Virus record (IMG/VR): IMGVR_UViG_3300040801_004034
Location: 124,001-188,000 of that record
Reading direction: 5' to 3' (one strand)
Length of the DNA: 64,000 nt
Part shown: piece after piece, positions 6,017-8,087 of the stretch
Layout of the letters: the number at the start of each line of letters is the position of its first letter
How positions within the stretch are numbered: position 1 is the first letter of the stretch
Position numbers and translations under genes: made by a program
The notes under the pieces: model-generated
Told to the model about the DNA's origin: nothing
Database searches by the model: none
What the model saw: only the letters and a program-made list of their open reading frames with translations

Positions 6017-6126
6017 TTTGTTGTGTATCAACTATCGACGGCAGCCAGTGAGCAGCCGGTTACAATGGGTCACTACCACGTAGCGAAAAGATCGTCACTT
6101 ATATCATAGCTGGTACAACATAACAA
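6017..6126 (+). ncRNA. orphan pseudoknot-like RNA, family B copy 1
   Basis: Motifs shared with 8008-8087. Confidence 0.5.
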
Positions 6127-6131
6127 TAATC

Positions 6132-6203
6132 GCACTGTAGTGTAAGGCTAACACGCTCCAATCAAGAGGGAGTAATTCGGTATAGGACCCGATGGTGCAC
6201 CCA
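6132..6203 (+). pseudogene. degenerate tRNA-like element
   Basis: Acceptor and D arm with CCA; noncanonical T-loop and anticodon loop. Confidence 0.4.
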
Positions 6204-6215
6204 TTTATATTTTAT

Positions 6216-6291
6216 GGCGCCATCGTCTAAAGGTCAGGACAATACCCTTTCAAGGTAGAAATCGAGAGTTCAAGTCTCCGTGGCGTCACCA
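6216..6291 (+). tRNA. tRNA-Glu(UUC)
   Basis: Loop CTTTCAA, CCA. Confidence 0.9.
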
Positions 6292-6297
6292 TTTTAT

Positions 6298-6373
6298 GCC
6301 TCATCGGACTATATAGTAGCGCAGCATTACTGCAGTGATGATGAAATCGGTGTGACTCCGATATGGGGCTCCA
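6298..6373 (+). tRNA. atypical tRNA-Cys(GCA)
   Basis: CTGCAG loop, U73, CCA; noncanonical T-loop. Confidence 0.55.
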
Positions 6374-6669
6374 TTTTACCAGGCAGAAATGTTCACAACG
6401 GAGATACAAGCGCGAATACGATCAATGCGGTGTCCGCTTCACCTGACCTGGTAATTAATTTTATTAACAAACTAAAGTATCCATTACAAATTGGATCAAC
6501 ATTATATCCTAAAGGTACGGTTGTTGAGGTGCTAATGCACAACGATAAACGCATTACAAATGTGTTTCCAAACATGCAACATAACCCTGAATCAACACAA
6601 GTAGCAATCATGCTACCAGGGAGAGAGAAACCAACAATACATGTTGCAAAAGGTAATGAATAATTTTAT

Positions 6670-6746
6670 GGGGATGAAGCTTATTAGGAAAAGCGGCTGG
6701 CTCTTAACCAGTAGTCTTGTCGGTTCGAATCCGATTATCCCTACCA
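6670..6746 (+). tRNA. tRNA-Lys(CUU)
   Basis: Loop CTCTTAA, CCA. Confidence 0.9.
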
Positions 6747-6931
6747 TTTAGTATACTGCTCCTTGCCTTGTAAAGCAAATGGCATCTCCTATGACTAATG
6801 ATACAATACAGCGGTTCGAAACGCAAAATTGGTGACCGATTAGGGATGAATTCCTCCGTGTAGGAAGGAGCTTAAATTTATATAAACTACGGAAAAGTAA
6901 GTAAACCTGCAATGAGAATATAAATATTATC

Positions 6932-7540
6932 ATGAGATATTTCATGTATAAAACAACTAATTTAAAAAATGGTAAAATATACATCGGTGTGCACAGGACC
7001 AAAAATGTAGATGATGGTTATTTAGGTTCAGGTGTTATGATAAAACGTTCAATCCTTAAATATGGTAAACAATGTTTTAAAAAAGAAATATTGCAAGAAT
7101 TTGAGTCGGTATCAGCAATGTATGATGCTGAAAGAAATACAGTTACAACTGAATTTATTAACAGGCCTGATGTTTACAATCTTAGAGTTGGTGGTTGGGG
7201 TGGAAAAATCACTGAACAAACACGCCAAAAAATATCAAAAGCTTTATTAGGAAAGAAAAAAACAGACCAGATGAAAGAAAAACTTAGAAACGCTCGAACA
7301 GGTACAAAATTAAAGGAATCCACAAAAAACAAGATTCAAAATTCGAGAAACGAAAACAAAGACAGTCGAGATCAAATATGGTGTACACTTTTTGATGAAT
7401 GGAAAAATAGCGGTTTGAGTAAAAATGAATTTATAAAAAAAGCAGGTTATCATAGCACAACAACAGCAACATATAATTGGGTTAGGCTAGGATTACAGCC
7501 TGCTAAAGAAAGAATAAAAAGAAAAATTAAGACCTCTTAG
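6932..7540 (+). CDS. GIY-YIG homing endonuclease (Seg-like) with NUMOD3 repeats
   Basis: YKTTNLKNGKIYIGVH...GYLGSG; YNLRVGG. Confidence 0.9.
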   Translation: MRYFMYKTTNLKNGKIYIGVHRTKNVDDGYLGSGVMIKRSILKYGKQCFKKEILQEFESVSAMYDAERNTVTTEFINRPDVYNLRVGGWGGKITEQTRQKISKALLGKKKTDQMKEKLRNARTGTKLKESTKNKIQNSRNENKDSRDQIWCTLFDEWKNSGLSKNEFIKKAGYHSTTTATYNWVRLGLQPAKERIKRKIKTS

Positions 7541-7607
7541 CTCAGAGGACAGAGCAGCAGCCTACGAAGTTGCGTTGTCGGGAGTTCGAATCTCTCAGAG
7601 GTCACCA
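7531..7607 (+). tRNA. tRNA-Arg(ACG)
   Basis: Loop CTACGAA, CCA. Confidence 0.92.
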
Positions 7608-7614
7608 TTTTTAT

Positions 7615-7690
7615 TGTCCCGTGTGTGTAACGGATAGCACGACTGACTTTGAATCAGTAGGTCCAGGTTCGATTCCTGGTGGAGCTGCCA
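7615..7690 (+). tRNA. tRNA-Gln(UUG)
   Basis: Loop CTTTGAA, CCA; weak acceptor stem. Confidence 0.7.
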
Positions 7691-7695
7691 TTTAT

Positions 7696-7787
7696 TGCAG
7701 GGTAGTGTAATCCGGTAACATGTCGGGCTCATAACCCGAAGAAGCACTTCGAGTGTGTTGTAGGTTCAAATCCTTCCCCTGCCTCCA
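7696..7787 (+). tRNA. initiator tRNA-fMet(CAU) with long variable arm
   Basis: GGG/CCC anticodon stem, 1-72 mismatch, GCAC-TTCGA-GTGT arm, CCA. Confidence 0.85.
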
Positions 7788-7862
7788 TTTTCTGATATTG
7801 TAATATTGACGTGTTACAATTGATGTATGATTGCCATATGGATAATAGCTGCGTCAACAGTT

Positions 7863-7946
7863 ATATGAAGTATCGCTGATATAGTGTAATTGGTAACACA
7901 GCCTCCTAACACGAGGCGGATATAGGTTCGAGTCCTGTTTTCATAT
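7863..7946 (+). ncRNA. tRNA-Val(AAC)-like domain embedded in a larger RNA
   Basis: GCCTC-CTAACAC-GAGGC arm, normal D and T arms, extra hairpin before the D arm. Confidence 0.45.
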
Positions 7947-8007
7947 TGCAATCGTTAATTTATAGATAATTGATACGGAGTAGTTGAACGAAAAAGTATC
8001 ATTTATT

Positions 8008-8087
8008 TGCTGTTGACGGCTAGTGAGCCGGTATAAACACCTAACCAGTGTAAATGCGAAAAGTTGGTCACTTATTATTAACGGTAA
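8008..8087 (+). ncRNA. orphan pseudoknot-like RNA, family B copy 2
   Basis: GACGGC..AGTGA..GCCGGT..GCGAAAAG..GTCACTTA. Confidence 0.5.

What the first reader, a model, noticed from the sequence alone, without database searches (positions are those of the whole stretch)
6017..8087. Orphan ncRNA family B: two copies of a candidate pseudoknot
6017-6126 and 8008-8087 share GACGGC, AGTGA, GCCGGT, GCGAAAAG-N3-GTCACTTA. The loop AGTGA is complementary to the distal TCACT, suggesting a pseudoknot inside a closing stem. The compact conserved core resembles a small ribozyme or aptamer but matches no class I can recall.
Basis: partly seen in the sequence, partly recalled or inferred. Interest (0 to 1): 0.6.

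Follow-up and report, generated by a model that had tools for sequence, protein, structure and literature searches.

The report
Two-copy orphan RNA in phage tRNA array
Two related ~80-base elements in the spacers of a giant phage tRNA gene cluster share a three-helix RNA fold with a possible pseudoknot, and one lies inside an RNA seen in a metatranscriptome, but with no relatives anywhere it stays an unclassified candidate RNA.

Summary
GACGGC, AGTGA(GC), GCCGGT and GCGAAAAG-N3-GTCACTTA occur in the same order at 6037-6101 and 8015-8074, both on the + strand. These are the only two copies in the 221-kb phage genome.

Each copy folds on its own into the same shape:
- a closing stem (P1);
- a CGGC/GCCG hairpin whose loop carries AGUGA (P2);
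- a two-part hairpin with a 7-nt loop (P3);
- an almost invariant single strand, GAAAAG-N3-G-UCACU-UAU.

P3 and P1 differ in sequence but stay paired. G-U pairs make the fold specific to the + strand, which is also the tRNA strand.

In a metatranscriptome from the same microbial mat, one of only two contigs on a 5.9-kb stretch (7989-8157) covers copy 2 completely.

The AGUGA:UCACU pseudoknot is geometrically sound. It cannot be tested by covariation, because both strands are invariant and I found no homolog. I searched Rfam 15, IMG/VR, JGI metagenomes, GTDB genomes, GenBank phages, ten other phage tRNA arrays and T4 rnaC/rnaD.

My best reading is a lineage-specific structured RNA module within a stable spacer RNA of the tRNA precursor. 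Nothing supports a ribozyme or aptamer role. Interest is moderate to low until homologs or biochemistry exist.

The parts
6018..6126 (+). Copy 1 with its extended outer stem. It fills almost the whole spacer between tRNA-Gly(tcc) (5935-6011) and a tRNA-like gene (6132-6203).
   Evidence: MFE and centroid folds; tRNA positions; sequence.
6032..6038 (+). Copy 1, P1 5' strand (CUAUcGA). It pairs with 6104-6109.
   Evidence: Pair probabilities 0.57-0.99 in the native spacer.
6039..6058 (+). Copy 1, P2 hairpin: CGGC(A)GC / GC(A)GCCG, loop C-AGUGA (AGUGA = 6047-6051). It has 3 more stem layers than copy 2.
   Evidence: Pair probabilities 0.97-1.00; sequence.
6059..6084 (+). Copy 1, P3 two-part hairpin: GUUAC/GUAGC and UGG/CCA, with 7-nt loop GUCACUA.
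   Evidence: Pair probabilities 0.71-0.79; compensatory against copy 2.
6085..6103 (+). Copy 1, conserved single strand GAAAAG-AUC-G-UCACU-UAUA. UCACU (6095-6099) is the proposed pseudoknot partner of AGUGA.
   Evidence: 17 of 20 tail positions are identical between the copies; complementarity read from the sequence.
6104..6109 (+). Copy 1, P1 3' strand (UCAUAG).
8009..8016 (+). Copy 2, P1 5' strand (GCUGUUGA). It pairs with 8078-8085 and includes three G-U pairs.
   Evidence: Pair probabilities 0.82-1.00 in the spacer context; flank-duplex shuffle p=0.0014.
8017..8030 (+). Copy 2, P2 hairpin CGGC/GCCG, loop U-AGUGA (AGUGA = 8022-8026).
   Evidence: hairpin shuffle p=0.007.
8031..8057 (+). Copy 2, P3 two-part hairpin: GUAU/AUGC and ACAC/GUGU, with 7-nt loop CUAACCA.
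   Evidence: Pair probabilities 0.85-0.94; compensatory against copy 1.
8058..8077 (+). Copy 2, conserved single strand GAAAAG-UUG-G-UCACU-UAUUA (UCACU = 8068-8072).
8078..8085 (+). Copy 2, P1 3' strand (UUAACGGU).
7989..8157 (+). Extent of the 169-nt metatranscriptome contig that contains all of copy 2. It lies within the spacer 7946-8170, between tRNA-Val(aac) and a tRNA-like gene (8171-8292).
   Evidence: Run X4, record 21, 0 differences, depth 5.7. The only other X4 contig on 4600-10500 is 5622-5776.

Best explanation
The two copies are paralogs of a lineage-specific structured RNA module. It is transcribed on the tRNA strand as part of the polycistronic precursor of this T4-like phage's giant tRNA array.

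Shown:
- Both copies adopt the same P1-P2-P3 three-helix fold.
- The fold works only on the + strand.
- Stems vary and compensate, while the 3' single strand and the P2 hairpin are nearly invariant.
- Copy 2 lies inside a discrete RNA of about 170 nt or more that accumulates in a metatranscriptome.

Inferred:
- The invariant parts form an H-type pseudoknot. Stem 1 is CGGC/GCCG and stem 2 is AGUGA:UCACU. There is a 1-nt first loop and no nucleotide between the stems. P3 and the A-rich GAAAAG lie in the long third loop, where the adenines could dock into stem 1.
- RNase P cleavage at the downstream tRNA-like gene, plus 3' maturation of the upstream tRNA, release the spacer. The compact fold protects it from decay.
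- The result would be a small stable RNA that acts as a binding module for a protein or another RNA. This is the role left open for T4's tRNA-cluster RNAs rnaC and rnaD. It would not be a catalyst or a riboswitch.
For: - There are only two copies in the genome, both on the + strand.
- A model built from copy 2 alone retrieves copy 1.
- On the two-copy alignment, 94.9% of cells are paired and 7 of 20 pairs are changed on both sides. Slid controls give 23-54% paired.
- Independent partition-function folds in the native spacers give P1, P2 and P3 at p = 0.57-1.0 in both copies.
- The unpaired tail is 17/20 identical. P3 paired positions are 5/15 identical, yet all remain paired (Fisher p = 0.004).
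- A U-G pair is conserved in P3 and there are three G-U pairs in P1 of copy 2, so the minus strand cannot form the fold.
- Copy 1's three extra layers lie in the P2 stem. The loop stays N+AGUGA in both copies, as an H-type pseudoknot requires.
- RNA run X4 has only two contigs on 5.9 kb, and one (7989-8157) covers copy 2. DNA runs of the same sample cover the stretch evenly.
- T4 has small stable RNAs at the equivalent place: segB, tRNA-Arg, rnaD, rnaC. Here a SegB-like gene (6932-7540), tRNA-Arg and three further tRNAs precede copy 2.
Against: - There are only two sequences, and the alignment used for pair counting was fitted to the structure.
- Each helix alone is only modestly better than shuffles (p = 0.0014-0.10). 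Whole-element MFE z-scores are unremarkable.
- The pseudoknot has no covariation support.
- Copy 1 is not covered in the RNA run.
- Logan contigs give no strand or true ends, and the contig is longer than the motif.
- No homolog was found in any collection, including ten other phage tRNA arrays. Conservation beyond this phage population is therefore unproven.
- No partner or function is known.
Confidence: 0.45

Rival explanations
1. Neutral leftover. A spacer, together with its tRNA trailer, was duplicated as the array grew. The shared blocks reflect recent common descent, and the hairpins are incidental to AT-rich spacer RNA.
For: - tRNA arrays grow by duplication.
- Both copies are preceded by the same trailer-like CATTT(T)ATTTG(Y)TGT.
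- Ungapped-style sequence similarity is marginal, 31 against 29.
- Single-helix shuffle p-values are modest.
- No homologs exist to show purifying selection.
Against: - Divergence is very uneven and runs the wrong way for drift. The unpaired tail is 85% identical. P3 paired positions are 33% identical yet remain fully paired.
- 7 pairs are changed on both sides.
- The indels preserve the pseudoknot loop geometry.
- The neighbouring tRNAs are not paralogs: Gly(tcc) against Val(aac).
Confidence: 0.25
2. One reading: a small self-cleaving ribozyme, which would help cut the tRNA precursor, or a ligand-binding aptamer.
For: - The core is compact and invariant, with a pseudoknot inside a closing stem.
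- The conserved junction is purine-rich.
- The element sits in a transcript that must be cut many times.
Against: - No ribozyme or riboswitch family in Rfam 15 scores, even at E<=10 on the isolated spacers.
- The RNA contig runs unbroken through the whole of copy 2 and both flanks.
- Copy 1 lies between two tRNA genes, with no ORF or expression platform to control.
- RNase P and the 3' processing enzymes already account for tRNA release (established knowledge).
Confidence: 0.07
3. A DNA-level element. The two direct repeats would be ends or target sites of a mobile cassette (homing-endonuclease or IS200/IS605-like), or protein-binding sites, bracketing the 2-kb block that carries the SegB-like gene.
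For: - The copies are direct repeats 2 kb apart.
- They flank a GIY-YIG SegB-like gene and several tRNAs.
- IS200/IS605 ends carry similar same-strand hairpins (own knowledge).
- A relative has a TnpB gene immediately upstream of the homolog of ORF 8310.
Against: - No transposase lies between or beside the copies.
- The model finds nothing around the relative's TnpB.
- Conserved G-U pairs and compensatory changes point to selection on a single-stranded + strand fold.
- An RNA covering copy 2 accumulates.
- Homing does not create flanking repeats (established knowledge).
Confidence: 0.08
4. A degenerate or arm-less tRNA-like RNA. P1 would be the acceptor stem, P2 the D arm and P3 the anticodon arm, with the T arm replaced by the tail that pairs with the D loop.
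For: - The order of the helices is like a cloverleaf.
- Both P3 loops have 7 nt with U at position 2 and would read as valine anticodons (CAC, AAC).
- ARAGORN in very lax mitochondrial mode calls copy 2 tRNA-Val(aac).
Against: - That ARAGORN mode gives 57 calls in 2.5 kb, which is noise, and it does not call copy 1 in the same way.
- The Rfam tRNA model gives no hit at E<=10.
- There are no linker nucleotides between P1 and P2 or between P2 and P3.
- P3 has 8 pairs plus internal loops, where an anticodon stem has 5.
- There is no encoded CCA and no CCATTT trailer, which the tRNA genes of this array almost all carry.
Confidence: 0.07
5. A cis-acting transcription element. In the manner of the HK022 putL/putR RNAs, it would modify RNA polymerase so that it reads through the many stable hairpins followed by U-runs in the 18-kb array.
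For: - There are two copies per genome.
- Two adjacent hairpins have compensating differences.
- The location is inside a very long structured transcription unit, where most tRNAs end in CCAUUU.
- The put analogy comes from my own knowledge and was not tested.
Against: - No promoter was identified just upstream.
- The copies lie 4.5 and 6.5 kb into the array, not at its start.
- No model of put RNAs was available for comparison.
- Accumulation as a discrete RNA is not required by this model.
Confidence: 0.08

Closest known systems
Phage T4 small stable RNAs rnaC (species 1) and rnaD (species 2)
   Same: - They are encoded inside the phage tRNA gene cluster, on the tRNA strand.
- They lie next to a GIY-YIG SegB homing endonuclease gene and tRNA-Arg.
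- They are annotated as small stable RNAs with no function given.
- Here a SegB-like gene, tRNA-Arg and three further tRNAs precede copy 2, and an RNA covering copy 2 accumulates.
   Different: - There is no sequence or structure similarity. Model R2 gives nothing on the T4 region.
- The T4 RNAs end in tRNA-like 3' parts (read from the sequence). The motif has no T arm or CCA.
- The T4 RNAs are single-copy.
Functional tRNA-precursor spacers in E. coli (3'ETS of leuZ, internal spacer of metZWV), which act as sRNA sponges (own knowledge, not checked here)
   Same: A spacer is excised during tRNA maturation and survives as an RNA with a job of its own.
   Different: - Those spacers work by simple base pairing with sRNAs and have no conserved pseudoknotted fold.
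- No target of the present motif is known.
H-type pseudoknots with an A-rich third loop or an embedded hairpin, for example the preQ1-II and SAM-II riboswitches and luteovirus frameshift pseudoknots (own knowledge)
   Same: - A hairpin loop pairs with a downstream strand.
- The first loop is 1 nt and there is no nucleotide between the stems.
- Adenines in the long loop are available to dock into stem 1.
- A hairpin (P3) is embedded in that loop.
   Different: - None of these families' Rfam models scores on either copy.
- The context is neither a 5' UTR nor a coding frame.
- An extra closing stem (P1) encloses the whole element.
HK022 putL/putR antiterminator RNAs (own knowledge)
   Same: There are two copies per phage genome. 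Each is about 70 nt, has two adjacent stem-loops, and differs by compensating changes.
   Different: - The put sites follow the early promoters, and no pseudoknot is known in them.

Membership tests
Any Rfam 15 family (4227 models, including hammerhead, twister, twister-sister, pistol, hatchet, HDV-like and all riboswitch classes) | Covariance-model score at or above the family's gathering threshold. | tested here: not met
   - No hit on either copy at gathering thresholds.
- No hit at E<=10 on 5900-8350.
- No hit on the copy 1 spacer alone.
- On the copy 2 spacer the only hit is T-box at 9.1 bits against a gathering score of 93, E=7, which is noise.
Small self-cleaving ribozymes | Site-specific self-scission of the transcript. 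| not testable with these tools
   The only indirect evidence is that the RNA-library contig 7989-8157 is continuous through copy 2.
Riboswitch / cis-regulatory aptamer | Sits in the leader of a regulated gene, with an expression platform (terminator or RBS sequestrator). | tested here: not met
   - Copy 1 lies between tRNA-Gly and a tRNA-like gene.
- Copy 2 is separated from ORF 8310 by a 122-nt tRNA-like gene.
- No terminator-like site follows either copy.
tRNA / tRNA-like gene of this array | Cloverleaf with a T arm (GTTCRANNC), and an encoded CCA followed by TTT. | tested here: not met
   - No Rfam tRNA hit.
- ARAGORN in standard mode finds nothing.
- Lax mitochondrial mode is at noise level.
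- The T-arm/CCATTT repeat family that marks most tRNA 3' ends in the array has no member at either copy.
T4 rnaC / rnaD | Sequence or structure homology to the T4 RNAs. | tested here: not met
   Model R2 on T4 68646-74912 gives a best hit of 9.8 bits, and it is not at rnaC or rnaD. blastn against GenBank phages gives only short chance hits.
T4 rnaC / rnaD (functional analogy only) | A small stable RNA encoded within the phage tRNA cluster. | tested here: inconclusive
   The position is analogous. Accumulation is seen for the copy 2 spacer only, and only from assembled contigs without ends or strand.
H-type pseudoknot (structural class) | Loop-to-downstream helix supported by covariation or probing; short first loop; stems stack. 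| tested here: inconclusive
   - There is 5-bp complementarity (duplex -3.7 to -5.0 kcal/mol).
- The first loop is 1 nt and the second is 0 nt in both copies.
- Both strands are invariant, so there is no covariation.
IS200/IS605 element ends / TnpB guide RNA | A TnpA or TnpB gene between or beside the hairpin-bearing ends. | tested here: not met
   The ORFs between the copies are a SegB-like GIY-YIG gene and an orphan of 103 aa. No R2 hit lies near the TnpB of relative L035.
HK022 put-type antiterminator RNA | Promoter-proximal, with two stem-loops, and confers terminator read-through in cis. | not tested
The resemblance is recalled from memory only.

The most novel reading that the evidence does not exclude
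The two copies are the first members of a new class of pseudoknotted functional RNA specific to giant phage tRNA arrays. The invariant core (CGGC/GCCG, AGUGA:UCACU, GAAAAG) would have an active role: self-processing of the array transcript, polymerase modification for read-through, or capture of a host factor such as a tRNA-targeting defence nuclease.
Probability: 0.1. Interest if true: 0.7.

Novelty: new variant of a known kind. Interest (0 to 1): 0.35.

Why it matters
Large phages carry tRNA arrays whose spacers are usually treated as junk. T4's own tRNA-cluster RNAs, rnaC and rnaD, still carry no functional annotation beyond 'small, stable RNA' in the T4 record.

A spacer element with covarying stems, an invariant pseudoknot-like core and evidence of accumulation would be a second, unrelated example. 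It would suggest that phage tRNA clusters encode additional small RNAs.

It would also give a compact, testable object of about 80 nt for asking what such RNAs do: processing, read-through, or a decoy for host factors.

As it stands it is confined to one phage population from one microbial mat, so its general importance is unproven.

Tried and rejected
**Searches for homologs (all negative)**
- Exact and gapped block patterns in IMG/VR returned only chance hits in coding DNA.
- One pattern scan of JGI metagenomes gave 2 chance hits.
- One pattern scan of GTDB genomes gave 13 chance hits, none scoring with the model.
- blastn of each copy against 50,697 GenBank phages found nothing.

**Searches through neighbouring proteins**
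- ORF 8310-8753 has homologs at 61-79% identity. In those relatives the gene is not in a tRNA array.
- Only the three-gene block 8310-9284 is syntenic, and the model finds nothing there.
- The SegB-like protein has no homolog above 41% identity. ORF 6352-6663 has none at all.
- The 489-aa and 147-aa array proteins have no relatives in IMG/VR.

**Searches in related and comparable phages**
- Portal-based relatives (63% identity) are fragments with no tRNAs, so their negative result is uninformative.
- Ten other large phage records with tRNA arrays were reached through a shared tRNA-Gly D-arm. None has a hit. The best, 14.8 bits, is an odd cloverleaf.
- Contigs of the same phage from the same study are 100% identical across the array (99.985% at the portal locus), so there is no population variation to use.

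**Readings rejected**
- Sigma-70 promoter or intrinsic terminator: no + strand site at either copy.
- Conserved small peptide: the possible ATG frames through the shared block are out of register between the copies (read).
- Third copy at genome 93,013-93,252 on the minus strand: it lacks all the blocks and does not align to copy 1.
- T-box: 9.1 bits, noise.

**Limits on the work**
- The whole-library protein-representative search and the structure tools were not needed.
- No alternative genetic code was used.
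Full report
**Context**

The window is bases 124,001-188,000 of a 221,292-bp virus record with 35.5% G+C. The phage has a T4-type portal protein (Pfam Portal_T4, E 4e-97). That protein is only about 31% identical to the portals of cultured phages. The DNA comes from a microbial-mat metagenome.

Window 1,500-19,500 is a very large array of RNA genes, all on the + strand. It holds 39 ARAGORN tRNAs, a tmRNA (16670-17018) and a GOLLD RNA (19025-19472). HNH and GIY-YIG homing-endonuclease genes are scattered through it. Both copies of the finding lie in spacers of this array.

**The observation**

- Copy 1: GACGGC 6037, AGTGA 6047, GCCGGT 6055, GCGAAAAG-ATC-GTCACTTA 6083-6101.
- Copy 2: GACGGC 8015, AGTGA 8022, GCCGGT 8027, GCGAAAAG-TTG-GTCACTTA 8056-8074.

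The whole genome holds only these two copies. A covariance model built from copy 2 alone, using a structure I drew by hand, finds copy 1 at 23.5 bits (E about 1e-3 for the 64-kb window, filters off). The next hit is 14 bits.

A gapped local alignment of copy 2 against the genome scores 61 for copy 1. The background is 26 +/- 4.5. Under stricter gap penalties the margin is small, 31 against 29. The relationship therefore rests on several short collinear blocks plus shared structure. A weaker third site, at genome 93,013-93,252 on the minus strand, lacks all the blocks and is chance.

**Anatomy**

Each copy, folded alone in its native tRNA-to-tRNA spacer, gives the same three helices with pair probabilities of 0.57-1.0.
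- P1 is a closing stem: copy 1 6032-6038 with 6104-6109, copy 2 8009-8016 with 8078-8085.
- P2 follows directly. It is CGGC/GCCG with loop N-AGUGA. Copy 1 has three extra stem layers.
- P3 follows directly. It is a two-part hairpin with a 7-nt loop (6059-6084; 8031-8057).
- Last comes a 19-20-nt single strand, GAAAAG-N3-G-UCACU-UAU(U)A, which leads back into P1.

On the two-copy alignment 94.9% of cells are paired. Seven of 20 pairs are changed on both sides, five of them in P3 and two in P1. Sliding the partners by 1-3 columns drops pairing to 23-54%.

The pattern of conservation is the reverse of what drift would give. The unpaired tail is 17/20 identical and the P2 stem 8/8. P3 paired positions are only 5/15 identical, yet every one stays paired (Fisher p = 0.004).

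A U-G pair is conserved in P3, and P1 of copy 2 has three G-U pairs. The fold therefore exists only on the + strand, the strand of the tRNAs.

There are caveats. Only two sequences are available, and the alignment was fitted to the structure. Each helix alone beats shuffles only modestly (p = 0.0014-0.10). Whole-element MFE z-scores are unremarkable.

**The pseudoknot**

AGUGA in the P2 loop is exactly complementary to UCACU in the tail of both copies. The geometry suits a classical H-type pseudoknot:
- one nucleotide (C or U) lies before AGUGA;
- no nucleotide lies between AGUGA and the 3' strand of P2;
- the third loop is long and contains P3 and the adenine run.

Copy 1's extra nucleotides went into the stem and left the loop unchanged. 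The 5-bp helix is worth -3.7 to -5.0 kcal/mol.

In copy 1 the P3 loop (GUCACUA) offers a second UCACU. Copy 2 has no such site, so the distal one is the conserved partner. I rate the pseudoknot as plausible, at roughly one chance in three to two in five.

**Expression**

The same mat sample has one RNA library, X4, a metatranscriptome of 30 million letters held as Logan contigs. On window 4600-10500 it has only two contigs.
- One spans 5622-5776, a long tRNA-like gene.
- The other spans 7989-8157. It is 169 nt, has no differences, and holds all of copy 2 plus 20 nt upstream and 72 nt downstream.

DNA runs of the same sample cover the whole stretch evenly. The remaining 5.5 kb is silent in X4, which argues against DNA carry-over. 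It points instead to a discrete, abundant RNA within the spacer 7946-8170.

Contigs give neither strand nor true ends. Copy 1 is not covered. If its spacer were excised it would be only about 120 nt, which may be too short for the library. That explanation is an inference.

**Comparison with known families**

Rfam 15 gives nothing on either copy, whether at gathering thresholds, at E<=10 on the region, or on each spacer alone. The single T-box line, at 9.1 bits against a threshold of 93, is noise. No ribozyme, riboswitch or tRNA model applies.

A tRNA-like reading was considered, with P1 as acceptor stem, P2 as D arm and P3 as anticodon arm with Val-like loops. I rejected it for these reasons:
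- the only support is ARAGORN's laxest mitochondrial mode, which makes 57 calls in 2.5 kb;
- there is no T arm;
- there is no encoded CCA or CCATTT trailer, which most tRNA genes of this array carry.

T4 offers a positional analogue. Its tRNA cluster runs segB, tRNA-Arg, rnaD, rnaC, and the last two are 'small, stable RNAs'. Here a SegB-like gene is 68% identical in DNA to T4 segB over 267 bp. It is followed by tRNA-Arg, three more tRNAs and then copy 2. The T4 RNAs do not match the model, so this is an analogy and not membership.

**Search for homologs**

All searches were negative:
- block patterns in IMG/VR;
- JGI metagenomes;
- GTDB genomes;
- blastn against GenBank phages;
- ten other large phage records with tRNA arrays, about 1.5 Mb, reached through a shared tRNA-Gly D-arm.

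The neighbouring gene 8310-8753 has homologs at 61-79% identity. In those relatives it sits among ORFs and not tRNAs. Only the three-gene block 8310-9284 is syntenic, and the model finds nothing there.

Portal-based relatives are fragments with no tRNAs and so tell us nothing. Contigs of the same phage from the same study are identical across the array. The element therefore lies in lineage-specific, fast-changing DNA, and for now it is an orphan.

**Interpretation**

My best-supported reading, at confidence 0.45, is a structured RNA module in two paralogous copies. It would be co-transcribed with the tRNAs and retained within a spacer RNA that survives precursor processing. Its invariant pseudoknot-like core would serve as a binding surface.

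What is shown:
- two copies;
- a shared + strand fold with compensatory changes;
- a conserved single strand;
- an accumulating RNA over copy 2.

What is inferred:
- the pseudoknot and adenine docking;
- release by RNase P and 3' maturation;
- a trans-acting binding role.

The rivals are:

| Rival | Confidence |
|---|---|
| Neutral duplicated spacer | 0.25 |
| Mobile-element or protein-binding DNA repeat | 0.08 |
| put-like transcription element | 0.08 |
| Ribozyme or aptamer | 0.07 |
| Degenerate arm-less tRNA | 0.07 |

**Verdict**

The ribozyme/aptamer label is not supported.

The element is a new, unrelated example of a known kind of thing: small RNAs hidden in phage tRNA clusters. Its support is too thin to call it a new RNA class, because there are only two sequences from one population. 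Interest is 0.35. It would rise sharply if homologs with pseudoknot covariation, or biochemical activity, were found.

Noticed in passing
window 5606-5778: A long tRNA-like gene of about 170 nt. It has a normal D arm, a T arm (GGTTCGATTCC) and an encoded CCA. The RNA-library contig 5622-5776 covers it, insert included, so the long form accumulates.
   Followed up: partly
window 8171-8292 and 2990-3018: A 122-nt RNA gene-like stretch just downstream of copy 2. It ends in CCA-TTT and has an unusual T-loop, GGTGAAAATCC. The same variant T arm occurs at 2990-3018. Neither ARAGORN nor Rfam calls it.
   Followed up: partly
window 6132-6203 and 6300-6372: Two more non-canonical tRNA-like genes lie between the copies. 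The first seems to have a 9-nt anticodon loop and is called only in ARAGORN's mitochondrial mode. The second has an odd T arm, TCGGTGTGACTCCGA, followed by CCATTT (family D13). Both copies of the motif lie directly upstream of such non-canonical genes.
   Followed up: partly
window 14150-14226: A tRNA with anticodon CUA, which ARAGORN labels 'Pyl'. It is an amber-suppressor-type tRNA. I did not examine whether the phage reads TAG as sense in some genes. The ORFs I used are intact under table 11.
   Followed up: no
window 16670-17018 and 19025-19472: A phage-encoded tmRNA with tag GENQLMAA, and a GOLLD RNA (179 bits) with a tRNA-like segment embedded at 19094-19167. Both lie at the far end of the same array.
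   Followed up: no
window 10011-10045, 11883-11917, 15192-15226, 19516-19550: A four-copy repeat, AGGAAC-N6-7-TATAAT-...-ATG, ahead of ORFs in the array. It looks like a phage promoter with an extended -10 and a GGAAC upstream box (family D10).
   Followed up: no
window 1823-1845, 3945-3967, 8293-8315, 10844-10866: A conserved leader, TTTGATTAAATATTnnTATG, joins a tRNA-like 3' end directly to the start codon of four ORFs, two of which are HNH endonucleases (family D15). It suggests a shared insertion or translation-start cassette.
   Followed up: no
window 6932-7607; L045 2995-3740: The SegB-like GIY-YIG gene ends 10 nt inside tRNA-Arg(acg), mirroring T4's segB-tRNA-Arg adjacency. The gene is 68% identical to T4 segB in DNA over 267 bp, although the two phages are very distant.
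   Followed up: partly
L035 8782-9996 (228-kb JGI relative): In the nearest large relative, an IS605-type TnpB gene sits immediately upstream of the homolog of ORF 8310-8753. That is the position where this phage has copy 2 and the tRNA-like genes. Only the three-gene block 8310-9284 is shared between the two genomes in this region.
   Followed up: partly
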